Counted from the stretch's first letter, positions 1,301 to 60,290 are shown. The stretch: DNA of 64,000 nt from Macrostomum lignano (GCA_002269645.1 NIVC01000038.1:682001-746000), one strand, 5' to 3'. Numbers and translations: made by a program. Notes: a model not told the origin generated them from the sequence alone.

Positions 1301-1412
1301 GGTGTGGGGTATGGGGAACAGGGTGTGGGGTATGGGGAACAGGGTGTGGGGTTGGGTGAGTAATCACGTTTGTTTCTAACGCCACGGATATCAAATTGGA
1401 TTTACAACTCAG

Positions 1413-6787: not shown

Positions 6788-25754
<18,967 letters not shown>

Positions 25755-27880: not shown

Positions 27881-27884
27881 ACCG

Positions 27885-28585: not shown

Positions 28586-28846
28586 CCTCAAATTTGCTTG
28601 CTTTTCTATGAACTAAAATGACCGTTGCCTCAAAGTCAGAACTCCGGGAACTCTCCACAGCAATTGTAGCGTCAAGGTAAACATGCCGTCAAAATTAACA
28701 AGCTGCTAAAAGCCAATGAGAAACTTAAGCCCATCAGGGCGCCTTCAGCCAAAAGCTCAAAACTGCGGTACGATCTGATGCCGAGGTTCTCAATACAGGC
28801 AGACTTCTCTTCTACTGACTCACAGAAGCTTGCAATACGTCACAAA

Positions 28847-31800: not shown

Positions 31801-31949
31801 GCCGTCTGAAAACCAGCTAGTTTGACTGGGCGAGGCTTCCCTCTCTGTTACTCACCCCTTTTCTCGGCCCAAGCCGGTTTGGTGATACTAATGCGTCTCA
31901 CTATACCTAGAACAAGCTCATCTCACCGCTCTCGGCCCTTTTCATTGCT

Positions 31950-32765
31950 GCGGTTGTATTCCTGCATCTGGAGTTCTGCGCGAGCTGTCGGAACCAATTC
32001 GGCATGGCCCTGATGAAAAGTGTCGCCAGAGCTTTTGTTTGGGGGCCAGGAATAGATGCTGACATCGAGTTGGTTGTAGCAGCTGCCAAGACTGCCAATC
32101 CATTAAGCTGCATCCGGTGCTGGCTTCCACTGCACCCCTGGGTGTGGCCAGACCAGCCCTGGGACCGCATCCACGTTGACTTTGCTGGGCCGGTTAGACG
32201 CCGCCTGCAGTTTCTCCTCTTAGTGGAGGCGACTCAAATCGGCCGAGCTGGTCCGCAAGCTGCGAGCGTTGTTTGCACAATGGGGCCTCGTATCCAGAAC
32301 TCGTATCGGACAACGGTCCAGCATTCATCAACCAGGGGCTTAGCAATGTCTGCAAGGCAAATTGAATTCGCCATGCAAGAAGCAGCCCATATCACGCCAA
32401 GACCCACGGACTGGTGGAACGGCTGATGAAGTCGTTCAAGATGGCCATGGAGGCGCCACAGAGCAGTCAGCCTGACCTCAACATCCGCCTGTGCAGCTGG
32501 CTGCTGGGCTACCGAGCTAGCCCGCACCCAACGACCGGTCGGACACCAGCGGAGCTCTTCCTGAAGCGGCAGCTTCGGACTCGAATGGATCTGCTGCGGC
32601 CGTCAGCCCAGGATCGAGTACTGCGAGAGAAATCGGCCCAGAAACGACAGCACGACCGGCGGGCGCGAGAGCTGCCGGAGGAGCCGTGGTCGGAGGCCTG
32701 GGCCAGGGACTACCGGCCTAATGCGGCGGCCTGGCAGCCAGCTAAAGTTCTCGAGCAGACCGTTC
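31950..32765 (+). mobile_element. Degenerate Gypsy (Mag/K02A2.6-like) integrase fragment
   Basis: MKSVARAFVWGPGIDADIE (integrase Zn-binding region), WPDQPWDRIHVDFAGP, ERLMKSFK...YRASPHPTTGRTPAELFLKRQLRTRMDLLRP; deletions and frameshifts. Confidence 0.9.
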
Positions 32766-33429
32766 GATCAGAAATTTTTTTTGACGGTACACGTGTCTTG
32801 GCTAAGAAATTGCTCAATGCTAAAGGGATCGAATATTCGAAAAACATGCTTTTATGCAAAGGTCAAGCAGACTTTCCGATTTGAAATGTATTGTAAGAAT
32901 GCTAGATAAAAAACTGACTGGCTGAATTCCGGATTTGAATCTCAGTAGTGTAAAGTTTTTTATTTAAACCTTTTATTCAACGTCAAACATAAAAGTTGCG
33001 TCATGTAAAACATGTAAGAAGCCTCAAATTTTTATTAAATTTTTGGAACAATTTACACGAAAAAGGTGACTTCAAAACTGAAATATGCTCTTAAGAAAAT
33101 GAGCTTCTTATAAATAAGTTTATTCTCTTGCTTATTGGGCGCCCCAAAGGGGGGAACTAGATTGCTAGTCCTATATACTAGCAGCAGTTTTAGCCATATA
33201 AACTCGGTTTAAAGTTTTCGGCTGCAGCAGAAGCGGCTGTTTTTCCAGTAGTCTGGACATCCGTCGGTTATCATTGAAGGATTTTCGTCTTTTGCTTATT
33301 GGGCGCCCCCCGAAGGGGGCAGTAGATTGCTATCAAAGCATGAGAACAGCCATGAGAGTACTACGTCCCACAAACTGGCTTTCCAAGCAGGAATGGGCAG
33401 ACTTTTACCTCAAAGGCCAGAAAAGAATC

Positions 33430-35486: not shown

Positions 35487-35754
35487 TCAGTCCGCTTCTT
35501 GCTGGATCGGCTCCGCTTCGGCAGCCAATCTGGCCAGGAGGTCGCGAGTTCGAGGCTCGGATTCGTCGTACAATATTCGCAAACACAGGGAGCAGGTCTG
35601 GCACTGTAGCAGTGGCAAGCGGGACAGCAGCTGGGCTGCGTGAATACCCACCTGTTCAATTGCGGGTGGCTGTTGTGAGTTGTCTGCCTTTCTGCCTGCC
35701 TGTCTGTCTGTCTGCCTTTCTGCCTTCCTGTCTGTCTGTCTGTCTGTCGTCTGT

Positions 35755-35799
<45 letters not shown>

Positions 35800-36131
35800 T
35801 GTCTGTCTGTCTGTCTCTCTGTCTGCATTTCTGCCTGCCTGTCTGACTGTCTGCCTTTCTGACTGTCTGTCTGTCTGTCTTTCTGCATGTCTGTCTGCCT
35901 GCCTGTCTGTCTGTCTGCCTTTCTGCCTGCCTGCCTGTCTGTCTGCCTTTCTGCCTGTCTGTCTGTCTGCCTTTCTGCCTGCCTGCCTGTCTGTCTGCCT
36001 TTCTGCCTGCCTGTCTGTCTGTCTGCCTTTCTGCCTGCCTGCCTGCCTGTCTGTCTGCCTGCCTGTCTGTCTGCCTGCCTGCCTGTCTGTCTGCCTGTCT
36101 GTCTGTCTGTCTGCCTGTCCGTCTGTCTGCC

Positions 36132-36179
<48 letters not shown>

Positions 36180-36762
36180 AGCAGACCCAATCCCCGAAAA
36201 CTCACCCGGTCCCCGCAGCGGCAGTCCCAAAAGCACTGAAAGCTGCTCAGCAGAGTCCCGTGAGCTGCATCCAGACAAGCGGCTGTGCAATCTTCTTCTA
36301 TCAGATTGTCCAGTAGTTCGGTCACCGTGAGCTCCTCTTGAACAGGGTGGTCCTGCCAGGGGTTGATGCAATTGTTTAAGACACCCCAATATTCCTCACA
36401 CAGACACCCCAGACACCCTTTGAAACCTGAATACCACCCAGCTTAGATAAATTGATTCACAGGCATTCAAAAGCAAACAGACTCAACACAACCTCGAGCT
36501 GCTCATTCACCTGTTCCCGCCTGCTCAGCATCAGTGCTGCATCGTACACTCGTCTCAAGCTGGCATCTCGCAGCACAGAATAGGCCATGTTAATCAGATG
36601 AAATCCCTCAGCATCTGGGTTTTTATCTGGGTGATACTTGAGACATGCAGTTTTCCATGCGGCTCTGATACTGGATTGATCGGCCTGCGATGAGACGCCC
36701 AACACGCGGTACCAGTCCCTGCTCACAGGTATTGACTCACCAAACTGCTTTGCCGAAGTCAT
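35487..36762 (-). CDS. DNAJC24: DnaJ homolog subfamily C member 24 / DPH4 (J domain + CSL zinc finger; diphthamide biosynthesis), ~190 aa
   Basis: Exons 36762-36511, 36352-36206 and 35669 (or 35651)-35487, all phase 0. J domain YRVLGV...KYHPDKN...AYSVL; CSL finger CRCGD...CQTCSL split by a microsatellite-filled intron. Confidence 0.9.
35685..36180. repeat. (CTGT/CTGC)n microsatellite in DNAJC24 intron 2
   Basis: Direct reading. Confidence 0.95.
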
Positions 36763-36839
36763 ATGTGAGTCACAAAAACAGCTGGAACAACTAGAATTTG
36801 CAATAAAGAGACATTTTAAACATAAATTATTTGAAAAAA

Positions 36840-37080
36840 TCTTACTGCAACCGACATAGCCATATCTGAAGGCAGCGTACGGCCGTCCAGTCCAAGGTCT
36901 GGGGGTCACCACACACACTAAATTACCCCAGCTAATGCTGGCACCCATTTTACAGCTGAGTGAACTGAAGCAATGCAGAGTCAAGTGTCTTGCTCAAGGA
37001 CACTAGTTGTTTCGGTGAGGTCGAGAATTGAACCCCCGACATTCAAGTCGTAAGTTCGAAGCTCTAACCACTAGGCTACA
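36840..37080 (-). mobile_element. tRNA-derived CORE-type SINE
   Basis: Minus strand has an A box (tagcctagtgg), a B box (ggttcaattc) and a CORE-like gtccttgagcaagacactt...ctgtaaaatggg. Confidence 0.75.
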
Positions 37081-37345
37081 ACCCCCCTTATTCTTTTAAT
37101 GCTACTGAAAGTAGAAATAAGAAAATAAGAAAATATAAACAACAAAAAGTTAACGAAACAATAAAACAGAATTTTATATTTACATAACATACAAGTATAA
37201 CATATAACAATATAACGGATTCTAAGAAATTTTATTTCAAACATAAGGGAGCCATTGTTAACTGATAGTTACAATTACAACAACATATGCTTCTTTTCAA
37301 CAAATCATAAAATTCTAAGAAATCAACTTTAAATCAATAAGGGTC

Positions 37346-37795
37346 TGTAACCACCGAGAAGGCAAGCAGTCGGAGGCCTTTTTCCTTAGGATGTTAAGCT
37401 TGGCTCTGCTCGTGCAATTAACACCCTTAAGGACCAAACCCCAAAAGCACAGTGAAGTGTACATGCCTTAAAGATAGATAAAGTTTGGGCCGCTGTGCAC
37501 TCCTGTGTGAGTGCCTGCTCAGAGAATGGGGAGTATTGCATCTTGCCGGTTGTGTGACAATGTTGCTTAATTAAAGTGGATCAATTCGGTCCATCCGGTG
37601 TTGAGAATGCGGAGAACCTTATCTGTGAACGTCCGCTACCTATAAATAAGGGCTACCGGGCGAGCGACCATCTAACCTCTTGGATAGTCATTGCGGGACA
37701 CCCCAGGACCAGACGTGTCTTGTTAATGAAGATTTACGCAACTGTAAGCTAGTCTTCAATTAAGAATATAATAAAAAGAAATCCGAAAATCAACA
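37346..37795 (+). mobile_element. Possible solo LTR (450 bp)
   Basis: TGT...ACA ends, TATAAATA at 37641, AATAAA at 37770. No TSD found. Confidence 0.45.
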
Positions 37796-37854
37796 TTTGG
37801 TTTTTTATGACGCGTTTCGCACACCAAGGTGCATCGTCATAAAGGTAAAATTAT

Positions 37855-38092
37855 GATCCAATACCACGACTGAAAGGTTGGGGCTACGATTCTCGACCCA
37901 CTAGGAACAATAATTTGTGTCCTTGAGCAAGACACTTAACTCATGCATTACTCAGTTCACCCTGTTGTAAAATGGGGTAATTATGCGTGTGTGGCGACCT
38001 ACCAGTCCTTGGACTGAATAGCCGTACGCAGCCTTCAGTTGCAAATTAGGACAGATGTAATAATAAATTATTATTATTATCATTATTTATAT
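37855..38092 (+). mobile_element. Second copy of the CORE-type SINE, inverted relative to the first
   Basis: gtccttgagcaagacacttaac...tgtaaaatgggg...ccttggactg...gccgtacgcagccttcag with an (ATT)n tail. Confidence 0.75.
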
Positions 38093-38122
38093 GAACCTAA
38101 ACTTGAAGAATTCATTTAGCTA

Positions 38123-38644
38123 CTACTGATTAGCAGCAGACTGAGTAGTAGTATTGCTAGCAAGATCATGCTCAGAGGCAGCCTGACTCAGGGGAGCCAG
38201 CTCGCCCACAGCCGCCACAGACGCGGCATAGTGCTCAGGATAAGCTCTCTCAGTCAGCCGTTTAATATTATTAATCCTTTTAAACACCAGCTCAAGATCT
38301 TTCCGCAACTCGTCCAGAGTCTGCTGGTGCTGCCGGAACTCCCCACTCAGCTGGCGAAATCGTCCCAGCGAGAGTTCATTGAAATTTGACAGCATATGAT
38401 TGGCCCGCTCGAATCTCTCAAGCATCTCAGTCTGAGACACTGTGATCACGTGCAGGGAGGGCCGGTCAATCATGGATAGAAATGAGCCAGTGAGAGCTTC
38501 CGGTCTCTGGGGATTCACTAATGTCTGCCGGCGCAGCTGCTGCTGTCTCTGCTGAGGAGACACCTGACCATCGCTGTCATCAGCTGCTGCTGCTGCTGCT
38601 GCTGTGGCACCATCATGGCTGCTGCTGCCGGAGTTCGATGTCAT
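38123..38644 (-). CDS. KXD1: KxDL motif-containing protein 1 (BORC subunit), single coding exon, 173 aa
   Basis: QTEMLERFERANHMLSNFNELS...LDELRKDLELVFKRINNIK...YPEHY matches the KxDL domain. Confidence 0.9.
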   Translation of the reverse strand: MTSNSGSSSHDGATAAAAAAADDSDGQVSPQQRQQQLRRQTLVNPQRPEALTGSFLSMIDRPSLHVITVSQTEMLERFERANHMLSNFNELSLGRFRQLSGEFRQHQQTLDELRKDLELVFKRINNIKRLTERAYPEHYAASVAAVGELAPLSQAASEHDLASNTTTQSAANQ

Positions 38645-38699
38645 TCAGTCAGAAGTGGATGTTGCACTGCAGTGATACCTAGTTCAACCGTACACCTGA

Positions 38700-38732
38700 G
38701 TGTCTGTCTGTCTGCCTGTCTCTCTGTTTGTA

Positions 38733-38770
<38 letters not shown>

Positions 38771-38838
38771 CGTTTTTATCTGTCTGTCTGTCTGTTTGTC
38801 TCTGTCTGTCTGTCTGTTTGTATCTATCTGTATGTCTT

Positions 38839-38877
<39 letters not shown>

Positions 38878-38898
38878 GAGTGTCTGTCTGTCTGTCTA

Positions 38899-38929
<31 letters not shown>

Positions 38930-38935
38930 GCCTGC

Positions 38936-38974
<39 letters not shown>

Positions 38975-38984
38975 CCTGCCTGCC

Positions 38985-39053
<69 letters not shown>

Positions 39054-39058
39054 TTCTG
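38700..39058. repeat. (CTGT)n microsatellite immediately upstream of the KXD1 acceptor
   Basis: Direct reading. Confidence 0.95.
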
Positions 39059-39431
39059 TCCCTATTTTCATAGTATACATTCTATTGAATTCCTTCAATT
39101 TCTTCAGTACATATTTATTCACTATACACCAAAATAGGATGTTGTGTACTGGAGTGCCTGCCCTAGCGTGTATACAACTATGTCTTGCCTAAATCTTTAA
39201 AAGAAAATAGCTAACATAAATTCATTACTATCAGAATGACGGAAGTAACACGGCTACTTCTAAAGATTAAGTAAAAATATTCAGAACCGAATTTTTTATT
39301 TAAAACACTAAGATTTTTCAAACAGACACAAATGACTTGTAGAAGTTATAAAATTTAATTCAACGGTTGAAAAGCGGGACATTGCAGCCCATGTAGCTCT
39401 GGGAAATGGTAGAATTTTGTGCTTTGTAGAT

Positions 39432-40340
39432 TGAGGCAGGGAGAGAGGCAGGGAGAGAGGCAGGGAGAGAGGCAGGGAGAGAGGCAGGGAGAGAGGCAGG
39501 GAGAGAGGCAGGGAGAGGCAAGGAGAGAGACAGGGAGAGAGGCAGAGAGAGGTAGGGGGAGAAGCAGAGAGAGACAGGGAGAGAGGCAGGGAGAGAGGCA
39601 GGGAGAGAGGCAGGGAGAGAGGCAGGGAGAGAGGCAGGGAGAGAGGCAGGGAGAGAGGCAGGGAGAGAGGCAGGGAGAGAGGCAGGGAGAGAAGGGAGAG
39701 AGGCAGAGAGAGACAGGGAGAGAGGCAGGGAGAGAGGCAGGGAGCGAGGCAGGGAGAGAGGCAGGGAGCGAGGCAGGGAGAGAAGGGAGAGAGACAGGGA
39801 GAGAGGCAGGGAGAGAGGCAGGGAGAGAGGCAGGGAGAGAAGGGAGAGAGGCAGAGAGAGACAGGGAGAGAGGCAGGGAGAGAGGCAGGGAGAGAGGCAG
39901 GGAGAGAGGCAGGGAGAGAGGCAGGGAGAGAGACAGGGAGAGAGGCAGGGAGAGAGGCAGGGAGAGAGGCAGGGAGAGAGGCAGGGAGAGAGGCAGGGAG
40001 AGAGGCAGGGAGAGAAGGGAGAGAGACAGGGAGAGAGGCAGGGAGAGAGGCAGGGAGAGAGGCAGGGAGAGAGGCAGGGAGAGAAGGAGAGAGGCAGGGA
40101 GAGAGGCAGGGAGAGAGACAGGGAGAGAGACAGGGAGAGAGGCAGGGAGAGAGGCAGGGAGAGAAGGGAGAGAGGCAGGGAGAGAGGCAGGGAGAGAAGG
40201 GAGAGGCACGGAGAGAGGCAGGGAGAGAGGCAGGGAGATGCAGGGAGAGATGCAGGGAGAGAGGCAGGGAGAGAGACAGGGAGAGAGGCAGGGAGAAAGA
40301 CAGGGAGAGAGGCAGGGAGAGAGGCAGGAAGAGAAGGGAG
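39432..40340. repeat. 12-bp purine minisatellite (gagaggcaggga)
   Basis: Direct reading. Confidence 0.96.
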
Positions 40341-40394
40341 AGAGGCAACTCAAAAAACAGCAGCAAAATAACAAGTAGGATGCAGCATCCGGCA

Positions 40395-42476
40395 TCAACT
40401 CCAAGCTCTCGCAGCACCGCCAGTCCTGGCAGCAGCAGCAGCAGCCGCAGGTGGCCGGTACAGCCACACGGAGTCCACCCCTTCAATAATCTGGTCGACA
40501 TGTCTCCAGTCGGGCAGTCGGTACCGACAAGCCACCACGCAGGCATCTGGATGCAACTCAGCCGCCAGCTTGGCTTGCAAGGGTTTCATTAAAGACTTCA
40601 CCCCGAATATCACCACAACATCGTATGTGGACAGCGAGTGGCGGAGCAGGTCGGTTCGTAGGAATTTCGGACGATGAATGCAGTTGAGACGGGAACAGGT
40701 GAGGCGACTGTACAGCACCAGGGGCCAGTTGAGCTCGACACCAGTAGCTTGGTACAGGCGGAGTGCCGCTTCGCGTACAATGCGACCGTCTCCGGAGCCA
40801 AGGTCTATCTGGTGTGAGGGAGTTAAGCGGTTCTTCATGGTGTGACTCTTCATGGTTTGATTCTTCATGGTGTGATTCTTTATGGGTTGATTCTTCATGG
40901 TGTGATTCTTCATGGTGTAATTCTTCATGGTGTGATTCTTCATGGTGTGATTCTTCATGGGTTGATTCTTCATGGTGTGATTCTTCATGGTGTAATTCTT
41001 CATGGTGTGATTCTTCATGGTGTGATTCTTCATGGTGTGATTCTTCATGATGTGATTCTTCATGGTGTGATTCTTCATGGTGTGATTCTTCATGGTGTGA
41101 TTCTTCATGGTGTGATTCTTCATTGTGATGCTTTATGGTGTGATTCTTCATGGTGTGATTCTTCATGGTGTGATTCCTTAAGGTGTGACTCTTCATGGTG
41201 TGATTCTTCATGGTGTGATTCTTCATGGTGTGATTCTTCATAGTGTGACTCTTTATGGTGTGATTCTTCATGGTGTGATTCTTCATGGTGTGACTCTTCA
41301 TGGTGTGATTCTTCATAGTGTGACTCTTTATGGTGTGATTCTTCATGGTGTGATTCTTCATGGTGTGACTCTTCATGGTGTGATTCTTCATGGTGTGATT
41401 CTTTATGGTGTGATTCTTTATGGTGTGATTCTTCATGGTGTGACTCTTTATGGTGTGATTCTTCATGGTGTGATTCTTCATGGTGTGACTCTTCATGGTG
41501 TGATTCTTCATGGTGTGATTCTTCATGGTGTGATTCTTCATGGTGTGACTCTTCATGGTGTGATTCTTCATGGTGTGACTCTTCATGGTGTGATTCTTCA
41601 TGGTGTGATTCTTTATGGTGTGATTCTTCATGGTGTGATTCTTCATAGTGTGACTCTTTATGGTGTGATTCTTCATGGTGTGATTCTTTATGGTGTGACT
41701 CTTCATGGTGTGACTCCTTATGGTGTGAATCTTCATAGTGTGATTCTTCATGGTGTGACTCTTTATGGTGTGATTCTTCATGGTGTGATTCTTCATGGTG
41801 TGACTCTTCATGGTGTGACTCTTCATGGTGTGATTCTTCATGGTGTGATCTTCATGGTGTGATTCTTCATAGTGTGATTCTTCATAGTGTGATTCTTCAT
41901 AGTGTGATTCTTCATAGTGTGATTCTTTATGGTGTGATTCTTTATGGTATGATTCTTCATGGTGTGATTCTTCATGGTGTGATTCTTCATAGTGTGATTC
42001 TTCATAGTGTGATTCTTCATAGTGAGACTCTTTATGGTGTGACACTTCATAGTGTTCATTTTTCATGATGTGATTCTAACAGTGATTTGAGAAGATGAAA
42101 AATCATTTTAGAAAGATTTTTAAGTGATATTTCAATGTGTCGACGGCCGCTCACTAACCAGTCTCACTGGCATGCTGGGCACCTTAGTAACTCTGTTATT
42201 CTTCTTGAGCAAGCTGAACACATTGGCCACCTGGCTGTCGGTGGCCGGTACAAACGGCAGCGCGTGGCGCCTCAGCGCCGGCGTCAGAAAGGGCGCCGCC
42301 GCGAACACCATGCCGAGGGCGCCGGCCGCGCAAGCGGCGCCAACCGCCAGACGGCGCAGGGGAGACGCGACTGCGGTCGGAGCTGACGGTGAAGATGATG
42401 AAGCGCCTGGGAGGCTGTAAATTGCAGCCTCATCACTGATGGCGCAGTTGGATTCCGAGTCTGGCTGGAGTATCAT
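40395..42476 (-). CDS. ATPSCKMT: FAM173-family mitochondrial protein-lysine methyltransferase (ATPSCKMT/ANTKMT-like), ~243 aa
   Basis: Exons 42476-42159 (CTG|gttagt) and 40808-40395 (ccag|ATA), phase 0. TM segment, then PALRRHALPFVPATDSQV; DLGSGDGRIV; GVELNWPLV; VVIFGV...ACRY...GVDSVWLY. Confidence 0.9.
40835..42070. repeat. 15-bp minisatellite (ggtgtgattcttcat) filling the FAM173 intron
   Basis: Direct reading; source of the MKNHT/EESHH/VILHG ORFs. Confidence 0.97.
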
Positions 42477-42599
42477 TTTTTGGCGAATGCTTTATGATTT
42501 CTGCTTTTGCAATCACTTTTCCAGGGGGTTATAAGGTCTTCAGGGTCATAGGATACATCTTAGGGTAAAAAATTGTTTACGTTCATGGAATGTTCTTTA

Positions 42600-42850
42600 G
42601 GGTCATGGGGTATAATGTAGACTCATAATGGAATATTCTTCATGGTCATTGGATATTTTTTGGCGTCTTGGGATACACTTTAGGGTCATGGAATATTCTT
42701 TAGGGTCATGGGATATTCTTTGGGGTCTTGGGATTACTTTAGGGTCATGGGACATTCTTTGGGGTCTTGGGATTACTTTAGGGTCATGGGATATTCTTTG
42801 GGGTCATGGGATATTCTTTAGGTCCTAGGATATTTTTAAGGTTCATGGGA
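42600..42850. repeat. Degenerate ~19/39-bp repeat (tagggtcatgggatattctt)
   Basis: Direct reading. Confidence 0.8.
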
Positions 42851-43022
42851 TCATACTAACGGTTATACAACACTTTTGGGGTCATACTATACGGTAGCCA
42901 CTATTATTATCACAAACTCGTAAATCTTTCAGCGCAAGACTATTGGCTATAATACCAACTATTTTCAAATAATATATTTGTAAACTTTTCAACTAGACTG
43001 TGAGCTAGCACAATGCACAAAC

Positions 43023-43778
43023 TCATTGCGATAGACTTCTAAAAGCAGCAACACAGGCAGATAAATCAACACCAACAGTGTTAGAAGCAGAAGTTCTTCG
43101 TTTCTTAGAGTCGGCAGCAGCGGCAATGCAGCTCAAAGCAGCAGACAAATCGAAAGCAACTCTCAAGCACAATTCACCAACAGTTTCTGCGCTGGCAGGA
43201 GGCACTCTCTTAAACACGTTAAAAGTTAAACAGTGATAAGCCAGTAGGCCAGCCTTTTGGTTGCCATGGTGACACAGGACAGTCAGTTGATTAGATTTTT
43301 CGTTGCTATCCGCTTCAAATGCCTTAGCAACGAAGTTGGCGGCTTCAATCAGCTGATTCCTAGTCAGACTGCCGCCAGGCAGTGCAGGGCAGCAGGCTAC
43401 TGCAGTTTGGTCCAGTCTCAAAGTGGCCTCACATCGACCAGCCAAGGTCAAAGCGGTGCTTGACAAATTTCTCAACTGATTGACAATTGACAGACACCTG
43501 GAGTGAGATCGAATCAGCCTGCTGATCTCAGCCTCATCCGGTGATTCTAAATTATTCGATAAAGACTCGTTTGAACTCGAACTCGAATAAGATTCATGAT
43601 CACTATCAGCTTCACTTGTGCTTTTATTCTCATCATTAGCTTTGGACAGAGCTAGTTTTAAATCTTGTCTCAGCTGACGAGTCGAAGAGCGCAGTCTGAC
43701 GCTTGTGGCGCGGTAGTCCAGCGCCAAGTCTACAAGTTGGCGCGAGTGACGTTGCCACAGTTGTGACACTTCGGGATC
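43023..43778 (-). CDS. ATG-less 251-codon ORF starting at a splice acceptor; helical protein with weak resemblance to CINP (unverified)
   Basis: ccctaatccctaatcttcgcgcAAG|GAT CCC GAA GTG...TGA; in-frame TAA just upstream (43793-43791); non-repetitive, coding-like composition; no Met anywhere in the frame. Confidence 0.7.
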   Translation of the reverse strand, partial: DPEVSQLWQRHSRQLVDLALDYRATSVRLRSSTRQLRQDLKLALSKANDENKSTSEADSDHESYSSSSSNESLSNNLESPDEAEISRLIRSHSRCLSIVNQLRNLSSTALTLAGRCEATLRLDQTAVACCPALPGGSLTRNQLIEAANFVAKAFEADSNEKSNQLTVLCHHGNQKAGLLAYHCLTFNVFKRVPPASAETVGELCLRVAFDLSAALSCIAAAADSKKRRTSASNTVGVDLSACVAAFRSLSQ

Positions 43779-43849
43779 CTTGCGCGAAGATTAGGGATTA
43801 GGGAATAAGTGTAGCTAAAAATCATATTGTCATGGCTATCTAGATTATC

Positions 43850-44350
43850 CAGAACTGATCCTTAGAGTCCCCAGTCTACTCAGAACTGATCCTCAGAGTC
43901 CCCAGTCTACTCAGAACTGATCCTTACAGTCCCCAGTCTACTCAGAACTGACCCTTAGAGTCCACAGTCTACTCAGAACTGATCCTTAGAGTCCACAGTC
44001 TACTCAGAACTGATCCTCAGAGTCCCCCAGTCTACTCAGAACTGATCCTTAGAGTCCCCAGTCTACTCAGAACTGATCCTTAGAGTCCCCAGTCTACTCA
44101 GAACTGATTCTTATAGTCCCCAGTCTACTCAGAACTGATCCTCAGAGTCCCCCAGTCTACTCAGAACTGATCCTTAGAGTCCCCAGTCTACTCAGAACTG
44201 GTCCTTAGAGTCCAGTCTACTCAGAACTGACCCTTAGAGTCCACAGTCTACTCAGAACTGATCCTTAGAGTCCACAGTCTACTCAGAACTGATCCTTAGA
44301 GTCCACAGTCTACTCAGAACTGATCCTTAGAGTCCACAGTCTACTCAGAA
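43850..44350. repeat. 31-bp minisatellite (cagaactgatccttagagtccccagtctact)
   Basis: Direct reading. Confidence 0.95.
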
Positions 44351-44540
44351 CTTATATATTACTTAGAAAATCAATTACTAACAAATAACCAAGCAAACAC
44401 AAAAAAATTCAAAGAAGCAATAAAGACCTAATGGTAGGTTAACAACAATTTACTTTGACACAATAATTGAACAAATAAAAACTTGCAATTAAGCTACTGA
44501 TAGTAATATAAACAAGAGAGCAACACTTAAAATTGCAGTC

Positions 44541-45854
44541 CTACACGGTAACCACATCTTTGCAAGCGACTCTGGTTACAAAACAGTAACTGAGCGAATC
44601 TCCAGATTCCTTTGACAGGGCCTGCTCCTCCGGTGTGACTTTGTACAGTTCAAATAGTTCGACAAGATCGCACTCGGGATTAGTGTCGGGCCACAGTGAA
44701 TGGCTAGATTCGCAATCTAGTTGACTGGTCAATTTGGATTCTAATCCGTCTAGGCTAGTGGACGGGTTATCAGCTGATTGGGGATGAAACAGCACAGCAA
44801 CTACACTGGCAGTGCTGGAGTTCATACCGAACTTGGCTAAAGATTGACTGATATTTTTTGTTGGCGATAGACAGTACAGCAGTTCCGTGTGAATTGATTT
44901 AGTTGCCATGCGAGACTCCGATTGATGAGCCAAAGCTTGATTGGCGGCTGTGAGCAGGTGCAAGCTGTCGTACACCTGAGATCAATGACAATTTTATGTC
45001 ATTTAGAAGGCCGCTAATACCCTATGGGTTATTTATTCATAAAAGGTCGCTAATACCCCTACAGGTCATTTAGAAGACCGCTAATACCCCATGGGTCATT
45101 TAGAAGGTCGCTAATACCGCTATGGGTCACTTAGAAGGTCAAAATATACCCCCAGGGGTCATTTAGAAGGTCGCTAATACCCCAGGGGTCATTTAGAAGG
45201 TCGCTAATACCCCAGGGGTCATTTAGAAGGTCGCTAATACCGCTATGGGTCACTTAGAAGGTCAAAATATACCCCCAGGGGTCATTTAGAAGGTCGCTAA
45301 TACCCCAGGGATCATTTAGAAGGTCGCTAATACCCCCAGGGGTCATTTAGAAGGTCGCTAATACCCCATGGGTCATTTGGAAGGTCACTAATACCCCCAG
45401 GGGTCATTTAGAAGGTCGCTAATACCCCATGGGTCATTTGGAAGGTCACTAATACCCCATGGGCCATTTAAAAGGTCACTAATACCCCATGGGCCATTTA
45501 GAAGGCTTCTAATACCCCCATGGGTCATTTAGAAGGTCAATAATACCCCCATGGGTCATTTAGAAGGTCAATAATACCCCCATGGGTCATTTAGAAGGTC
45601 ACTAATACTTCATGGGCCATTTAGAAGGTCGCTAATACCCTTGACTTCTTCAGAATCTCACTAATACAAGCACAGTTGCCGCAAAAGCTCACCAATTCAG
45701 TTGACACCAAAGCTCCAGCAAGGTGACCTTGAATAGCAGCAGTGTGCACCTCTGCAGGATTTTTCAATGCTTGAAACAGGCGCATTGAAATAGTCACATT
45801 AGGTACCGACATACTTGGATAGCGCATCCAACCAGTGCTTGAAGTTGTCATCAT
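44541..45854 (-). CDS. TPRKB: CGI-121/TPRKB, EKC/KEOPS complex subunit (t6A tRNA modification), 198 aa
   Basis: Exons 45854-45693 (TTG|gtgagc) and 44975-44541, phase 0. LFQALKNPAEV, HLLTAANQA, MATKSIHTELLYCLSPTKNISQSLAKFG are CGI-121 motifs. Confidence 0.9.
45000..45640. repeat. ~29-30-bp minisatellite (ggtcatttagaaggtcgctaatacccc) in the TPRKB intron
   Basis: Direct reading. Confidence 0.93.
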
Positions 45855-46699
45855 AGTAGCTGAATGTGTTTTTTTATATAATTTTTTTAGAATTAGGTCT
45901 AAAAATAATAATAAACCAAGAATGTCAAAAATATGAATATTGAATTAATAATTATACTATTTCATGACAAAAATCACTAGATAGAGATAATTTGACAATG
46001 ACCAAATTTTTATCAAAAGTTAAAATGCAAATGTTAAACACTAAAACAATAAATATTAAGCATGATCAAAGTTATTTGACAATCTCATAAAATTCATCTT
46101 AGATTAAAACTTCCAAATTGAATCAACCAAATATTTGCTTTAAAATGGAATAGGAAAGTTGACAATTGTCAATTGAAATACCAATTAGTCATTTTAATGT
46201 GACACAAAGATTTGGAACAAGTTGAGAGTTGAGTATGAATGTTGTAGCTTATAAATGAAGGGGGAGAATTAGGGATAATTGTGCTAGTATTAAATATTTA
46301 AAACAAAATACTAGCTACATAGCATTTACTCTAGTAGGTAAGTAGTAGGAATCAAATTCTTACAGTGGAAACAATAACAATAGTAATTAACTATAAAACC
46401 ATTTAATGCATACTGCACTTTGCACTATAATAGTACTTGAATTTTCTTTATTTAGTTTACCTTACATACAAATTAGATAAACCAAAATATTTCAATTAGT
46501 TTTACTTAAATCAAATTTAAAAAAAATATTTAGAAACAAATAGTAAATAGCAATCTCTACTAAATATTGACAAAATGCCTTATCTGCTATTGTGTAACAT
46601 TTGGAAATTAATATTTGTAGTGAAGCTGAATACTAGTTATAAAAATTCAATATGCATATATATAATATATAAAATATATATGTAGACTCTGCATATGAT

Positions 46700-47600
46700 T
46701 ATGATTCTATAAATTTAGACATTGCTTCTGTAGTGTTGCAAGAATTGGGGGTTGCTTGGATTTGGGTCTAGAGATCTTGGAATTGCACTGCTATTACCAG
46801 TGTAATGGTTTACTCTTTGGCTTTTGAGGTGGGATGGACTGCTGTTGTCCGGGTTAACCCTAGCAAACACTTTTATAGGGGCTGAGACTGGGGAGAATTC
46901 TAAAATCAAGGGAGTGCTACCACCAGCATGGGGACTATAGGATTGGTAATGAAGGGGTCTGATTAGGTTCCATGCAAATAAATAATGCTAGAACAACTAG
47001 TCTCAGAGATTTCAATGTCTAAATGACAGGACTCAATGGTAGCAAATGACCTAAGTGGCGCAGTCCTAGCACTGACAAATGTCTGTGCTTGAGCGTGTCT
47101 GAGTTTAGCTCTCAGAGGACCCTAACTCCTACTAACCTAATAGCTATGTCTCGCACAGATGGGCAGCAAGGAATAGGTCTATGCACCTATAGCAGCAACA
47201 GACTCACAACTGACTAAGTCTAATAGCTATTTCTTAGAATTGCGCACATGTGCTGCAACTGCAAAATCACTCTCACTCTTGTTATTCACACCTGTGTAGC
47301 AAATAGACAATCAGCAAAATGGTTTCAGCCAACTGATTTCCTGCCAATAAGGTAGGCTGGGAAATCAGAGCTATAGCACTAGCAATGCTCTACCAAGACC
47401 TGTTCAGGAGCATGCTTTCTGCTTGAGCACTGCAATGCTCTAACAAGACCTGCTTAGGAGCTTGCGTCTGCTTCTAGCAATGCTTTGCTCTACTAAGACC
47501 TGCTCAGGAGCTTTGCTTCGCTGTTAACTGGTGCTAGAGCACTAGACTTAGAGAAGGCTCTTGACAAGTCTTCACGAGGTGGTTCTAAGGAGAAAATCAG
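46700..47600 (-). pseudogene. Heavily mutated, CpG-poor coding-like remnant
   Basis: GC-balanced island in AT-rich DNA; one minus-strand frame reads protein-like between repeated TAG/TAA stops; family not recognised. Confidence 0.3.
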
Positions 47601-50133
47601 TCAAATGGCCTGCATGCATTGATATAGAACACGGAGGGTAGAGCGTTTGAGCATTCCATGGCTTGACCATGGATTGGCAACCTGAAGAATGTGGATAATG
47701 ATGCATAAAAAATATTGATTAAACATAGGGGGAGAGTAGCCGACAGTCGCCTCAAGCCATTAGTTAAACTAGCATGCCAAATTTGGGTTTATGCGCACAA
47801 GGCTGCACAAAGGGAGGGTTAAGCTCAGGACATGGGGTTCATGAAACCCTTAGTCTAAAAGAATGACATATGGGAAGAGGCTTAGATGGCAAAGGAATGA
47901 GAGAGCAAAAGGGGAGAAAGTCCAGCAAGTGCACAAGGAGAGGAATGCAGCTAACTAGATTTGCATACATTGAGCAATAATTGTATGTGGTAGGCTAGGC
48001 AACAATAGTACATGCAAGCGCCAAATTTGACGGCTTCCACTAACTAACCCTAGGCTAAAAAGCTTCCTAGTTTCCTATGTTAATGCCATAGTCAGGATCA
48101 TGTCATGGTATATGCCAGAATAAAAAGTCCCCTAAAAAAATCTACGCCACTTCTTACTGAAACATACGCCAAGGTCCTAGGAACTTATGCCAGGTTTTCT
48201 AGGCTTTGCGACAATAAATCAATAAATGACCTTTTTTGCGTGTTACACATTTCTTAACAATAAAAATTTAACAAATATGTGTTTTCATTTAAAGTACATT
48301 GGCTTACAGATAATGCCAACAAAAATCAATTTTTTGTTAAAGTTTTTTTTAGAAAATTAACACAATTAGTTTGCGTGGAATTTTAAATTTTTATAAATCA
48401 CGAATAGTTATGAGCTATCATCTTACAAGTTTTACGGTTTTTATGATTTTATAATAAGATTCTGAGGTTACGGCGTTATGCCAACAATTGTTAATATTAA
48501 CTTTGGCATGAAGGTTGGAGTTTACATATACTGCTTGGTGTATTTACGCCACGGCGTCACACCAAAAAGTATGCCAAATATATTTTGCCTCTTTTTTATG
48601 CCAATTATACACCAAAAAAAGTAAAATTTTCAATTGTACGCCAGGAATTTCTGGCGTCATGTACATCATCCTGACTATGGTGTTAATGAGCCTTAAGCCT
48701 CATTATGATGACTCAATTGTACCATATTATGCAACTTCTCAGTGCTAAGGAAGGCTGCTTAGAATGCATGGAGGCAATAGAATAGTTCTTATTCCAGATA
48801 CTAGCAGCGGATAGCAGTGCCTAAGATGTGAATATGGCCCTATGCTTATAGCAGAAGGCTGTGGCCACATCATTTCAAAAATGAAAATTAATGGGTTTGG
48901 CAATGTTTAAGTAGGAAGAAAACTATAAGCATTGTTACTAATCATTTATTTGAAACAAATAACATATTTGAAACATAATTTAATGAATATTATTAACAAC
49001 TCACTATTTTAATCCAATAATAACATCATAACATGTAGGGTAGGGCCTATTTGCTACTCCAGCCCTAATCCAATTAAAAATATATATAATTATTAATTTC
49101 TACAATAAATCAAAAGTAAAATATTACTTTAGATATATATACCAAAAAATATCAAAAAGATATTGCAATAATAAGTGGCAATAAAGGACCTGTTTTGCAT
49201 TGCAACAATATAGGACTATAGGATCATTTCTTGCATTACAACCTTTTTTATAGTCTTAGGCCTATATGATAAAATAATTATGCCATATGCCTGCTCTATG
49301 GCATAATTTTTCTAATGGATTGTTCCATACACAAGATACTTTGTGCCAACCATTTTTTCATGTCTGTTGTACACTGGAATTTTCCAGCATAAGACTTGGT
49401 TGGGAATATATTAGTAAAGACCAAAGAGCAACCCTACCAGAATACATTAGAATTGCTGTTAGAAATTTTATTACTTAACTAAGAATACACAACGACAACT
49501 TTGGTGGTATCAGTAGAATAATTTAAAAAGAGAAGTAAAACCCCAGGAAAATAATTTAGTTTTTAAATTCTTTTAGAGGTAGATTCAAAAGCCTTGTTAC
49601 AACGAAGTGACCAAGTGTTGGGGAGTGTTGACGAAGTGACCAAAAGTTCCATTATATGAATGATGTGTATCTGATACAACTTGAATCGTGCTTGATATTT
49701 ACCAGTGTAACATATTTTAAATCTACTATGCGTTGGGTCTTTACTTTTTACTTTAGCCTAAGATTTATAATTCGCTCCTTTTAAAAACAACAATGATCGC
49801 CGTTCTTTGAAACTTAAGGACTTAAAATGTTTAAAAAAGTAGGCCGCTATAACAACATTTACAGGTCATATATGTTACTGCTAAAATTAAAATGTTTTAT
49901 AATACATAAAAGTAACTTAAAACTTTTTAAAATTGTTTTTTAGCGTAACACTAAAAGACAAAATTATATATTGATTGATGTCAAGCGACTTATCCCAAAT
50001 TCAAAATTTCGCGTCTTGCAAGAAAGTTCAATCTGAACTGACTGAACACACACGAGGAGGCTTCAGACTTCAGGCGAATCACGCCTTCGTCATTAACTGT
50101 TTTTCTGTAACTTAAGGTGCTGGTTAATAGGTA

Positions 50134-50832: not shown

Positions 50833-52088
50833 TACTTTATGATGAATATTAACTAATTTATGTCAAACGTTTCCTTTTGCTGTATTGTAAATTTTATCAA
50901 ATTTAAATAAGTATAATATGATACATTCAAGTTTGATTCTTTTTTGGCTAGGTCATTTTTGCACTTTATATGACCAGCAAGTTACTTGCATGAAATTAAT
51001 GTTTTTTTGGCTTATTATATATGCAACTTTTGGTTGACAACAGCAGTTTAGACAACAGCTGGCTGATTAGGTATTTTAGTAAGTAGCATATGTATTTTTT
51101 TCATTTTTACTAGAATATATAATATTGTTAGTAGTAATAATGAATATATTTGTATATTTTTATTATTAAGCATGTTCTAGATGCTGTATCTAATTTAGTT
51201 TTCAAATGTTGAAATATTTTAGGATTATATATGTAAAACTATATTTATATAACATATTTTGGCAAATTAAAAAAAATATTATTTTGAAACTATTGTTATA
51301 ATATGTTTGTAACCTTTGATTGGAAATCTTTTGTAGTCTCAAGATTTTTGTTTTATATAAATTTGCCTCATTTTTATACTAATGTTATATTGTAATATTG
51401 TACCTAATGACCTCTTCCATTGTTTGAAAAGTACTTTTTTAATTATTTAAGCAGATATTTTCTATGCTATGTTACTTGCATTATAATTTTTGGTTTGTAA
51501 TTTTGAATTGAAATTGTGACTTGTTTCTACCTTAGCCACATATATGTAATTTTTCTGTATTCGCTAACAACCCCATCTTATGCTTCTAACTTTTCTTTGT
51601 AGTGCCTCTATTATGGTGTGCTTTCAAAAACAAAATATAAAAAAATAATTTTTGATAAAATACTACTTGATCTACTTTTTTTTCTTTTTAAAAACTGTCA
51701 ATAATAATAAAGTTATACAAAAGTTAATTTTCCTGTTATCATTTTAGCTATGAATTATTTTTAAATAAATCAAGTTATAGCTAACAAACATTTTAATATC
51801 AAGGAAAGTTGCAGACTTCATTTTACTGTACTAGAATAGACACCCTGCATTCACTAAGACACCCTGCACTTACTAAGACACCTTGAACTCACTGAAAGAG
51901 ACAACATGTACTGTACTCACTCCGAGATTAATGTGAGCTAATGTAAAGTCACCAAGACAGCTGGCAGCATGCTAGAAGAAAGTTCTAAAGATCTTTAGAT
52001 TTAAGAGTCCCACTATGTTTTTCCAGTTTAAATAGGTACTTTTTCAAATTCTTAAATAACTCGCAATTTGCATTGCATGACCAAAAGC

Positions 52089-60145: not shown

Positions 60146-60290
60146 ATAAAACGACAAGCAATCCATTAAGTAAACTTTTCAACTTTGACTGAATTTACAT
60201 CTTGAGTTTCAATGCAATAATTCATGATTGCAAAATTACCTTTGTTAGCAAGAACAATATTTTTATCATCTAACATTGAAGTGTTTAAAT

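What the first reader, a model, noticed from the sequence alone, without database searches (positions are those of the whole stretch)
35487..45862. Five co-oriented housekeeping-type genes arranged like an SL trans-spliced operon
Seen: TPRKB, the ATG-less ORF, FAM173, KXD1 and DNAJC24 are all on the minus strand. Stop-to-start gaps are 0.55-1.75 kb, and the three longer gaps are largely repeat or TE insertions. Splice acceptors sit just before the ORFs: cattcAG 5 nt before the TPRKB ATG, gcAAG at the ORF start, ctgcAG 22 nt before KXD1, ttgttccAG 19 nt before DNAJC24, and a weaker aagcAG before FAM173. Known: flatworms, nematodes and tunicates resolve polycistronic pre-mRNAs by SL trans-splicing, and such operons are enriched for small housekeeping genes. 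Inference: a five-gene operon linking t6A (KEOPS), diphthamide (DPH4), mitochondrial lysine methylation and BORC. Three members act in tRNA or protein modification, and I do not recognise this combination as described.
Basis: partly seen in the sequence, partly recalled or inferred. Interest (0 to 1): 0.8.

Follow-up and report, generated by a model that had tools for sequence, protein, structure and literature searches.

The report
Ordinary five-gene flatworm operon
Five small same-strand genes in the flatworm Macrostomum lignano look like one of that species' many spliced-leader operons, which the public genome annotation already groups into shared transcription units, so the finding is real but ordinary.

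Summary
Five intact genes lie on the minus strand at 35487-45854: TPRKB/CGI-121, an ORF with no ATG, ATPSCKMT (FAM173B), KXD1 and DNAJC24/DPH4. The gaps between them are 762, 546, 1750 and 1360 bp and are mostly padded with satellites and SINE-like elements.

The window is Macrostomum lignano, Mlig_3_7 contig NIVC01000038.1. [quoted passage not shown]

Two paralogous copies keep the same five genes. GenBank names them Mlig008015g1-g3, Mlig025748g1/g2/g4/g5/g6 and Mlig022980g1/g3. The name prefix denotes an RNA-seq-assembled transcriptional unit that was cut into genes at SL and poly(A) signals. The operon reading is therefore supported, though only indirectly, and it is already implicit in the public annotation.

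- A bare AG upstream of an ATG is expected by chance (81%).
- The TPRKB acceptor AG exists only in this copy.
- Nothing indicates a functional link among the five genes.

The most interesting detail is the ORF with no ATG. It is a Macrostomum-only orphan under purifying selection, with no methionine codon. It begins exactly at an acceptor that is in frame with the AUG at the 3' end of the spliced leader. I could not reach any direct SL-read or long-read evidence.

The parts
45869..45880 (-). TATATAAAAAAA, a TATA-like string 15-26 nt upstream of the TPRKB ATG, lying in a 34% GC gene-free stretch (45855-50130)
   Evidence: Identical in the paralogous copy aligned here (L001). Its spacing to the ATG is short for a canonical TATA-to-TSS distance, so any promoter role is only a possibility.
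45860..45866 (-). Candidate acceptor cattcAG, 5 nt before the TPRKB ATG
   Evidence: Both paralogous copies have cattcTG. Even so, the annotated mRNA 5' end in copy L001 falls at this same position (-5 to -3). From this site the SL-AUG would read only a 3-codon uORF.
44541..45854 (-). TPRKB/CGI-121 (KEOPS subunit), 198 aa. Exons 45854-45693 and 44975-44541. The intron holds a 30-mer satellite at 44998-45640.
   Evidence: PF08617, E 9.5e-29.
43850..44352 (-). 31-mer satellite filling 503 of the 762 bp between TPRKB and the ORF. A possible poly(A) signal, AGTAAA, lies at 44449-44454.
   Evidence: Copy number differs between the paralogous copies.
43779..43785 (-). Acceptor gcgcaAG immediately before the ATG-less ORF
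   Evidence: The GenBank 'partial' proteins of both other copies start exactly here. From this site the SL-AUG reads in frame for 252 codons.
43023..43778 (-). Orphan ORF of 251 codons with no Met codon and no in-frame genomic ATG
   Evidence: Found only in M. lignano. pN/pS is 0.17 across the three copies, and the indel between copies is in frame. No Pfam or PDB match.
42572..42857 (-). 20/39-mer satellite in the ORF-to-ATPSCKMT gap (286 of 546 bp)
42465..42507 (-). Two candidate acceptors for ATPSCKMT. aaagcAG (42501-42507) lies 24 nt before the ATG. tactcCAG (42465-42472) lies 12 nt inside the CDS, matches [T/C]TNCAG and is in frame with the SL-AUG.
   Evidence: The GenBank protein of copy L001 is 'partial' and starts one codon after the in-CDS acceptor.
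40395..42476 (-). ATPSCKMT (FAM173B) orthologue, 243 aa. Exons 42476-42159 and 40808-40395. The intron holds a 15-mer satellite at 40831-42077.
   Evidence: E about 1e-41 to animal ATPSCKMT; PF27912 on the hits.
38701..40347 (-). ATPSCKMT-to-KXD1 gap. It holds a CT-rich 12-mer satellite (39433-40347), an AATAAA at 39295-39300 and a (GACA)n array (38701-39060).
   Evidence: The annotated CDS of this copy (40546-39308) runs through the satellite, so the annotated mRNA extends at least to 39308.
38667..38674 (-). Acceptor cactgCAG, 22 nt before the KXD1 ATG. It matches [T/C]TNCAG.
   Evidence: Conserved in all three copies.
38123..38644 (-). KXD1 (BORC subunit, KxDL domain), 173 aa, single exon
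36866..38038 (.). Inverted pair of tRNA-derived SINE-like elements in the KXD1-to-DNAJC24 gap: 36866-37085 on the minus strand and 37866-38038 on the plus strand
   Evidence: Rfam tRNA, 30.2 bits, at 37016-37085; 73% identity between the arms; ARAGORN found nothing.
36782..36790 (-). Acceptor ttgttcCAG, 19 nt before the DNAJC24 ATG. It matches [T/C]TNCAG.
   Evidence: The GenBank 'partial' DNAJC24 proteins of all three copies start within 0-2 nt after an AG here or 9 nt upstream.
35487..36762 (-). DNAJC24/DPH4 (DnaJ plus CSL zinc finger), 187 aa. Exons 36762-36511, 36352-36206 and 35651-35487. Intron 2 holds a (GACA)n array at 35681-36179.

Best explanation
The five genes are cistrons of one spliced-leader-resolved operon of Macrostomum lignano.

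Proposed mechanism:
- Transcription starts in the AT-rich, gene-free region upstream of TPRKB and runs about 10.4 kb through all five genes. This step is inferred.
- Each upstream cistron is cleaved and polyadenylated.
- Each downstream cistron receives the 35-nt SL (CGGTCTCTTACTGCGAAGACTCAATTTATTGCATG) at an AG acceptor just before, or just inside, its ORF.
- Satellites and SINE-like insertions have stretched intercistronic spacers that were originally short.
- For the second cistron, which has no ATG of its own, the AUG at the 3' end of the SL supplies the start codon in frame. The same may apply, as an alternative, to ATPSCKMT.
- For KXD1 and DNAJC24, the SL-AUG opens only a 4-6 codon uORF and the genomic ATG is used.

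Shown here: organism identity, gene identities and order, repeat content of the gaps, frame relations, and shared transcriptional-unit names in GenBank. Inferred: a single promoter, actual SL addition at each site, and translation from the SL-AUG.
For: - Organism. KXD1 is 99% identical to M. lignano BOX15_Mlig025748g5, and the window equals NIVC01000038.1 exactly.
- Biology of the species. [quoted passage not shown] Repeat-corrected intergenic distances peak near 100 bp, and the published operon threshold is 1 kb (PMC8629364).
- Gaps. Tandem-repeat-corrected stop-to-start gaps here are 259, 260 and 475 bp. The fourth is 1360 bp before removing about 400 bp of SINE-like sequence and the 3' UTR.
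- Shared transcriptional-unit names. Copy L001 carries Mlig008015g1 (TPRKB), g2 (ORF) and g3 (ATPSCKMT), then Mlig025748g5 (KXD1) and g6 (DNAJC24). Copy L002 carries Mlig025748g1 (TPRKB), g2 (ORF) and g4 (KXD1), then Mlig022980g1 (DNAJC24).
- Naming rule (PMC5730564). The prefix names an RNA-seq-assembled transcriptional unit, grouped with its 95% cd-hit cluster. Genes are cut from it at SL-read peaks and poly(A) sites.
- Annotated 5' ends. The 5'-partial CDS starts lie immediately after an AG for the ORF in two copies and for DNAJC24 in three copies.
- Acceptor motif. KXD1 and DNAJC24 carry [T/C]TNCAG, which has a 6% background.
- Isolation of the cluster. The upstream neighbour is a divergent AIG2/GGACT gene 7.7 kb away in copy B. 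No gene is annotated for about 9.7 kb downstream.
- Conservation. All three genomic copies keep the order and intact ORFs.
Against: - I could not examine any SL-containing read, poly(A) read, RAMPAGE signal or long read.
- Transcriptional units were assembled from short reads that multi-map among three 97-99% identical copies, so adjacent genes could have been joined by read-through or by assembly error.
- No single annotated unit visibly spans all five genes. The names give 3+2 in one copy and 4+1 in the other.
- Some annotated 5' ends are not at an AG: ATPSCKMT in L001 is 1-3 nt off, and the ORF and KXD1 in the window copy are 4-9 nt off.
- The raw KXD1-to-DNAJC24 gap (1360 bp) and ATPSCKMT-to-KXD1 gap (1750 bp) are long enough to hold promoters.
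- About 60% of SL trans-spliced genes in this species are not in operons.
- The three copies are too similar in non-coding DNA (97-98%) for conservation to test any signal.
Confidence: 0.62

Rival explanations
1. There are two or more shorter operons rather than one, for example TPRKB-ORF-ATPSCKMT plus KXD1-DNAJC24, or a four-gene unit plus DNAJC24. An internal promoter would sit in one of the long gaps.
For: The GenBank unit names split exactly this way: Mlig008015g1-g3 against Mlig025748g5-g6 in copy L001, and Mlig025748g1-g4 against Mlig022980g1 in copy L002. The two longest gaps (1750 and 1360 bp) lie at those break points.
Against: The break point differs between copies, falling after gene 3 in one and after gene 4 in the other. 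[quoted passage not shown] KXD1 is joined upstream in one copy and downstream in the other, which chains all five genes together.
Confidence: 0.22
2. The five genes are independent and merely co-oriented. Each has its own promoter, and some or all are SL trans-spliced as monocistronic transcripts. The shared unit names would then be read-through or assembly artefacts.
For: Most SL trans-spliced M. lignano genes (about 60%) are not in operons. Gaps of 0.5-1.75 kb could hold compact promoters, since regions up to 2 kb upstream suffice for reporter expression in this species. Five genes share a strand by chance 1 time in 16. Short-read assembly with heavy multi-mapping is error-prone.
Against: Unique sequence left in the first three gaps after removing satellites and likely 3' UTRs is only about 150-300 bp. 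The annotated mRNAs of gene 3 run through the satellite to within a few hundred bp of KXD1. The cluster is flanked by much larger gene-free stretches.
Confidence: 0.1
3. The ATG-less ORF is not a separate cistron. It would be an alternative 3' exon of TPRKB: the exon-1 donor and the ORF acceptor are both phase 0, which gives an in-frame TPRKB(1-54)-ORF fusion.
For: Joining 45854-45693 to 43778-43023 reads through in frame. Acceptor sites shared between cis- and trans-splicing are common in flatworms (PMC12582326). The ORF has no start codon of its own.
Against: Phase compatibility has a 1-in-3 chance. The annotation pipeline, which places 5' cuts at SL-read peaks, cut a separate gene starting exactly at this acceptor in two copies. 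The SL-AUG is also in frame. This reading does not exclude the operon.
Confidence: 0.06

Closest known systems
Macrostomum lignano SL trans-spliced operons (Wudarski et al. 2017, PMC5730564; Ustyantsev & Berezikov 2021, PMC8629364)
   Same: Same species and same assembly. The genes are co-oriented, adjacent, small and conserved. The intergenic spacers are inflated by satellites and TEs. [T/C]TNCAG acceptors sit close to the start codons. The genes were cut from shared RNA-seq transcriptional units.
   Different: Nothing differs in kind. Five genes is at the upper end of the size range: 75% of operons have two genes, 18% have three, and the maximum is nine. One spacer (KXD1 to DNAJC24) is near or above the published 1-kb repeat-adjusted threshold with the repeat annotation I could make.
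Flatworm SL 3'-terminal AUG used as initiator methionine (Cheng, Cohen, Ndegwa & Davis 2006, J Biol Chem 281:733; cited in PMC9851317 and PMC12582326)
   Same: The M. lignano SL also ends in AUG. The second cistron has no genomic ATG, and its acceptor puts the SL-AUG in frame.
   Different: The mechanism was shown experimentally in Schistosoma. Here it is inferred from sequence and annotation only. The recipient is a lineage-restricted orphan with no methionine codon at all.
Caenorhabditis elegans SL2-type operons
   Same: A polycistronic precursor is resolved by 3' end formation coupled to SL trans-splicing, and unrelated housekeeping genes are mixed together.
   Different: M. lignano has a single SL with no SL1/SL2 specialisation. 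The spacers here are 0.5-1.75 kb rather than about 100 bp, because of repeat insertions.

Membership tests
M. lignano SL trans-spliced operon (criteria of PMC8629364) | The organism uses SL trans-splicing and has operons | tested here: met
   The window is M. lignano contig NIVC01000038.1. The biology is documented.
M. lignano SL trans-spliced operon (criteria of PMC8629364) | Genes are immediately adjacent, on the same strand, and not interrupted by a gene on the opposite strand | tested here: met
   Gene models. The annotated gene lists of all three copies show only these five genes, all on one strand.
M. lignano SL trans-spliced operon (criteria of PMC8629364) | Repeat-adjusted intergenic distance below 1 kb | tested here: met
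   The first three gaps are 259, 260 and 475 bp after removing tandem repeats. The fourth is borderline: 1360 bp raw, or about 950 bp after removing the two SINE-like arms, and less once the KXD1 3' UTR is subtracted. No RepeatMasker library was available.
M. lignano SL trans-spliced operon (criteria of PMC8629364) | Downstream genes carry the SL (SL-containing reads map at the acceptor) | not testable with these tools
   No reads or transcripts could be reached. Indirect evidence only: the annotated 5'-partial CDSs begin right after an AG for the ORF (two copies) and DNAJC24 (three copies).
M. lignano SL trans-spliced operon (criteria of PMC8629364) | A precursor transcript spans the genes | tested here: inconclusive
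   GenBank names place TPRKB+ORF+ATPSCKMT, TPRKB+ORF+KXD1 and KXD1+DNAJC24 under shared transcriptional-unit prefixes (naming rule). No single unit visibly covers all five, and the units come from short-read assembly.
M. lignano SL trans-spliced operon (criteria of PMC8629364) | One promoter upstream of the first gene and none internal | not testable with these tools
   Only a TATA-like string at 45869-45880 and an AT-rich gene-free upstream region were seen.
SL-AUG-initiated ORF (Cheng et al. 2006 type) | The SL ends in AUG | tested here: met
   The SL sequence ends ...TTGCATG (PMC8629364).
SL-AUG-initiated ORF (Cheng et al. 2006 type) | The recipient ORF lacks its own in-frame ATG, and the acceptor puts the SL-AUG in frame | tested here: met
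   The 255-codon stop-to-stop frame has no ATG, and an in-frame stop lies upstream in all three copies. SL-AUG plus the exon reads 252 codons.
SL-AUG-initiated ORF (Cheng et al. 2006 type) | Translation actually starts at the SL-AUG | not testable with these tools
   This needs Ribo-seq, N-terminal proteomics or a reporter assay.
KEOPS subunit CGI-121/TPRKB | CGI-121 domain over the full length | tested here: met
   PF08617, 100.9 bits, profile positions 1-159 of 159.
ATPSCKMT (FAM173B) | Close similarity to named orthologues, including the N-terminal ATPSCKMT region and the DLGSGDGRIV SAM motif | tested here: met
   E 1e-41 to 1e-36 against animal proteins named ATPSCKMT or FAM173B, which carry PF27912. 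The motif is visible. I did not test separation from FAM173A/ANTKMT by phylogeny.
DNAJC24/DPH4 | J domain followed by a CSL zinc finger | tested here: met
   DnaJ scores 64.6 bits. Zn_ribbon_CSL scores 28.2 bits (E 1.6e-6), which is just under the 29.2-bit Pfam cut-off.
KXD1/BORCS4 | KxDL domain | tested here: met
   PF10241, 74.7 bits, profile positions 1-86 of 86.

The most novel reading that the evidence does not exclude
The second cistron is a Macrostomum-restricted protein-coding gene with no methionine codon. It can be translated only after trans-splicing, because its sole start codon is the AUG donated by the spliced leader. Its expression would then depend entirely on operon processing. 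ATPSCKMT may switch between a genomic-ATG form and an SL-AUG N-terminus through the CTCCAG acceptor inside its CDS.
Probability: 0.5. Interest if true: 0.35.

Novelty: new member of a known kind. Interest (0 to 1): 0.15.

Why it matters
It matters little beyond annotation. The finding is a clean example of a repeat-inflated five-gene operon in a species where operons are already catalogued, and the public annotation already groups these genes into shared transcriptional units.

Two practical points follow. First, in this copy the GenBank CDS of the third gene is a spurious ORF through a CT-rich satellite, and it hides the real ATPSCKMT coding sequence. Second, the ATG-less orphan is a convenient test case for SL-AUG-dependent translation in a flatworm that can be made transgenic.

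The proposed functional link among t6A, diphthamide, ATP-synthase methylation and BORC has no support.

Tried and rejected
- Transcript evidence. Exact-sequence look-ups of window proteins, with or without an added Met, found no RNA-derived contigs. The protein clusters hold only NCBI, UniRef and MetaClust members.
- Per-gene trans-splicing flags. Full-text and supplement searches for Mlig008015, Mlig025748 and Mlig022980 found nothing.
- Microsynteny outside Macrostomum. The KXD1 and ORF searches reached only M. lignano. The best ATPSCKMT relatives sit on unidentified ENA assemblies without CGI-121, KxDL or DnaJ neighbours. The conserved-operon supplements of PMC12582326 mention none of these genes. 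All of this is uninformative rather than negative.
- Identity of the ORF. phmmer against 1.84 billion representatives gave only a translated tandem repeat (P0003), which I rejected as spurious. There were no Pfam or PDB hits. The single-sequence AlphaFold model had pLDDT 49.6, so I ran no fold search.
- Acceptor conservation among the three copies. Non-coding identity is 97-98%, which is too high to test constraint.
- Meaning of the '.gN' suffix. I first read it as paralogue numbering. I rejected that when two unrelated adjacent genes turned out to share a prefix and the naming rule was found.
- TPRKB as a non-trans-spliced first gene. I first argued this from the missing AG in the paralogues. 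I weakened the argument because the annotated mRNA start in L001 lies at that same position, and multi-mapped SL reads from the window copy could explain that.
- SL sequence or SL RNA gene in the window. None was found. Rfam found only the tRNA-like SINE head.
- The promoter and terminator scanner is bacterial, so I did not use it.

Full report
**What is in the sequence**

On the minus strand between 45854 and 35487 I could build five clean gene models with canonical GT-AG introns and intact frames.
- TPRKB: 45854-45693 and 44975-44541, 198 aa.
- An ORF of 251 codons, 43778-43023, with no ATG in frame and no Met codon at all.
- A methyltransferase: 42476-42159 and 40808-40395, 243 aa.
- KXD1: 38644-38123, 173 aa.
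- DNAJC24: 36762-36511, 36352-36206 and 35651-35487, 187 aa.

Pfam gives CGI-121 (100.9 bits), KxDL (74.7 bits), and DnaJ (64.6 bits) plus a CSL zinc finger (28.2 bits, just under the cut-off). The methyltransferase hits animal proteins named ATP synthase subunit C lysine N-methyltransferase / FAM173B at about 1e-41.

Stop-to-start gaps are 762, 546, 1750 and 1360 bp. Tandem Repeats Finder places satellites in three of the gaps and in three introns. They fill 503/762, 286/546 and 1275/1750 bp of the first three gaps. The fourth gap has no tandem array. It does contain an inverted pair of tRNA-derived SINE-like elements (Rfam tRNA hit at 37016-37085; 73% identical arms).

**Are the 'acceptors' more than chance?**

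However, an AG within 25 nt upstream is found at 81% of all minus-strand ATGs in this window, so a bare AG means nothing.

The acceptor motif published for M. lignano trans-splice sites, [T/C]TNCAG, lies within 30 nt upstream of only about 6% of ATGs.
- KXD1 (CTGCAG) and DNAJC24 (TTCCAG) have it.
- The ORF (CGCAAG) and TPRKB (ATTCAG) do not match.

**Organism and copies**

KXD1 is 99% identical to M. lignano BOX15_Mlig025748g5. Fetching the encoding contigs showed three copies of the same five-gene cluster in assembly Mlig_3_7 (GCA_002269645.1):
- NIVC01001521.1 (L001);
- NIVC01000143.1 (L002 and L006);
- NIVC01000038.1 (L003).

L003 is base-for-base the reverse complement of window 25487-46780. 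The window is therefore this third copy, and window coordinate + 682,000 gives the contig coordinate.

All three copies keep the gene order and intact ORFs. Exons are 97-99.5% identical, and unique non-coding DNA is 97-98% identical. The copies are too similar for non-coding conservation to test any signal.

Coding constraint is visible. pN/pS summed over copy pairs is 0.17 for the ORF and 0.25-0.61 for the other four genes. The ORF's only indel between copies is 9 nt and in frame. The counts are small and the pairs are not independent. Together with a 255-codon open frame, they argue that the ORF is a real coding gene.

**What is known about this species**

M. lignano has a single 35-nt SL, CGGTCTCTTACTGCGAAGACTCAATTTATTGCATG. 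[quoted passage not shown]

The authors found that repeats inflate the intergenic distances of operons. After subtracting repeats, the distances peak near 100 bp, and they used 1 kb as the operon threshold (PMC8629364). The repeat-corrected gaps here are 259, 260 and 475 bp. The fourth is about 950 bp before subtracting 3' UTRs. All fit that definition, the fourth only marginally.

**Evidence for co-transcription from the public annotation**

The genome paper explains the naming (PMC5730564). RNA-seq-assembled transcripts, called transcriptional units, were named by a prefix shared within 95% cd-hit clusters. Because many units were multi-gene precursors, a pipeline (TBONE) cut them into genes at SL-read peaks and poly(A) sites. 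ORFs were then called with TransDecoder.

The GenBank names of the cluster genes are as follows.
- Copy L001: Mlig008015g1 (TPRKB), g2 (ORF) and g3 (ATPSCKMT), then Mlig025748g5 (KXD1) and g6 (DNAJC24).
- Copy L002: Mlig025748g1 (TPRKB), g2 (ORF) and g4 (KXD1), then Mlig022980g1 (DNAJC24).
- Window copy: Mlig022980g3 (DNAJC24). The tool hides the names of the other window-encoded proteins.

Unrelated adjacent genes that share a prefix must have been cut from the same assembled unit or cluster of units. KXD1 is linked upstream in one copy and downstream in the other, so the names chain all five genes together.

The GenBank proteins flagged 'partial' begin exactly after an AG for the ORF in two copies (caAG|GAT). 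For DNAJC24 they begin within 0-2 nt after an AG in all three copies. That is the expected footprint of SL-trimmed 5' ends.

The annotated CDS of the third gene is, in two copies, a long spurious ORF through the CT-rich satellite. This error still shows that the annotated mRNA runs through the satellite to within a few hundred bp of KXD1.

**Limits of that evidence**

- I could not see any read-level data.
- The units come from short reads that multi-map among three near-identical copies.
- No single unit visibly covers all five genes.
- Some annotated 5' ends are not at an AG. ATPSCKMT in L001 starts 1-3 nt after CTCCAG. The ORF and KXD1 in the window copy start 4-9 nt inside.
- The AG of the proposed TPRKB acceptor exists only in the window copy, and both other copies have TG. 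Even so, the L001 mRNA start lies at that same position. SL reads from the window copy multi-mapping to L001 could explain this, or it could be a transcription start about 20 nt downstream of the TATATAAAAAAA string at 45869-45880. I leave the status of the first gene open.

**Boundaries of the cluster**

In copy B the only annotated gene within 10 kb upstream of TPRKB is a divergently oriented AIG2/GGACT gene 7.7 kb away. The window shows the same family on the plus strand from 52056, and 45855-50130 is 34% GC.

No gene is annotated for about 9.7 kb downstream of DNAJC24. The cluster is thus compact relative to its surroundings.

**The ATG-less ORF**

It has no in-frame genomic ATG in any copy, and a stop lies a few codons upstream of the acceptor. 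No relative was found outside M. lignano, either in a word-seeded search of 5.8 billion proteins or in a full phmmer scan of 1.84 billion representatives. The only other hit there was a translated tandem repeat. There was no Pfam or PDB match, and the single-sequence structure model is unreliable (pLDDT 49.6).

Because the SL ends in ATG, joining it at caAG|GAT gives an in-frame 252-codon ORF beginning MDPEVSQ.... Use of the flatworm SL 3'-terminal AUG as initiator is a described mechanism (Cheng et al. 2006, cited in PMC9851317 and PMC12582326).

At the other candidate acceptors the SL-AUG opens only 3-6 codon uORFs. The exception is the CTCCAG acceptor inside the ATPSCKMT CDS, where it is in frame.

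One rival reading is that the ORF is an alternative last exon of TPRKB. The exon-1 donor and the ORF acceptor are both phase 0, and the fusion reads through. The separate gene cut at exactly this acceptor in the annotation argues against this reading as the main form.

**Verdict**

My confidence is about 0.6 for one five-gene unit and about 0.85 for operonic organisation of some kind.

It is an ordinary member of a well-described class in this species, and the 2017 annotation already captures it implicitly. No evidence supports a functional theme among the members. SL trans-spliced and operonic genes in M. lignano are generally enriched for conserved genes.

The one mildly interesting element is the orphan cistron that appears to depend on the SL for its start codon.

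Noticed in passing
window 39308-40546 (-); L002 7652-9634: In the window copy, the CDS called for the third gene is a 412-aa ORF that starts inside ATPSCKMT exon 2 in another frame and runs through the CT-rich 12-mer satellite. In copy L002 the equivalent call is a 477-aa ORF that starts at the ATPSCKMT stop codon. Both look like longest-ORF artefacts that hide the real ATPSCKMT coding sequence (42476-42159 and 40808-40395).
   Followed up: partly
window 44541-44909, 43023-43772 and 38123-38635 (-): In the window copy the annotated products are 5'-truncated compared with the other copies. TPRKB starts at an internal Met (122 aa), the ORF starts 2 codons after the acceptor (249 aa), and KXD1 starts 3 codons after its ATG (170 aa). 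None of these starts follows an AG, and I cannot explain them. They may be assembly or multi-mapping effects.
   Followed up: partly
window 36866-37085 (-) and 37866-38038 (+): An inverted pair of about 190-220 bp elements, 73% identical. One has a tRNA-like head (Rfam tRNA, 30.2 bits; ARAGORN found nothing). They are probably tRNA-derived SINE copies, and they flank about 800 bp of the KXD1-to-DNAJC24 spacer.
   Followed up: partly
window 35681-36179 and 38701-39060; also about 630-1300, 9131-10164, 11138-11846 and 18252-18554: The same (GACA)n/(TGTC)n microsatellite recurs in an intron of DNAJC24, in the ATPSCKMT-to-KXD1 spacer and at several distant places in the window. It generates long spurious ORFs on both strands.
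   Followed up: no
window 45693 (exon-1 donor of TPRKB) and 43778 (ORF acceptor): Both splice sites are phase 0, so a cis-splice between them would give an in-frame TPRKB(1-54)-ORF fusion protein.
   Followed up: partly
window 52056-59311 and 60249-61949 (+): Two tandem AIG2-like / gamma-glutamyl cyclotransferase-like genes (PF13772, PF06094) lie on the opposite strand, divergent from the cluster. One intron-like stretch between 52.4 and 58.5 kb has strongly skewed base composition.
   Followed up: partly
window 1380-1697 and 3308-4063 (+): Exons of a rhodopsin-family GPCR (PF00001, E 4e-14 for the C-terminal exon).
   Followed up: partly
window 27589-28164 (-), 28670-29842 (+) and 31911-32881 (+): Open frames with reverse-transcriptase-like (FVDFRKAFDSV) and integrase-like (HVDFAGP..., SPYHAKTHGLVERL) motifs but no Pfham hit at E 1e-3. 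They are probably decayed retroelement fragments, and they fill the gene-free stretch downstream of DNAJC24.
   Followed up: partly
window 12226-12639, 17223-17588, 19986-20417, 22012-22308 and up to 25754 (+): Several plus-strand open frames share an acidic Ser/Glu-rich, lysine-rich motif (for example [20 protein letters not shown]). A plus-strand gene annotated with a 1528-aa product ends at about 25754. The repeated frames may be its exons or paralogous units.
   Followed up: no
L002 11940-11992 compared with window 36762-36800: In copy L002 the annotated DNAJC24 mRNA starts after an upstream AG (ttctAG), 9 nt before the ttccAG used in the other two copies. L002 has ctagCTGTTCCAG where the window has ctagTTGTTCCAG. 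This may be a copy-specific shift of acceptor.
   Followed up: no
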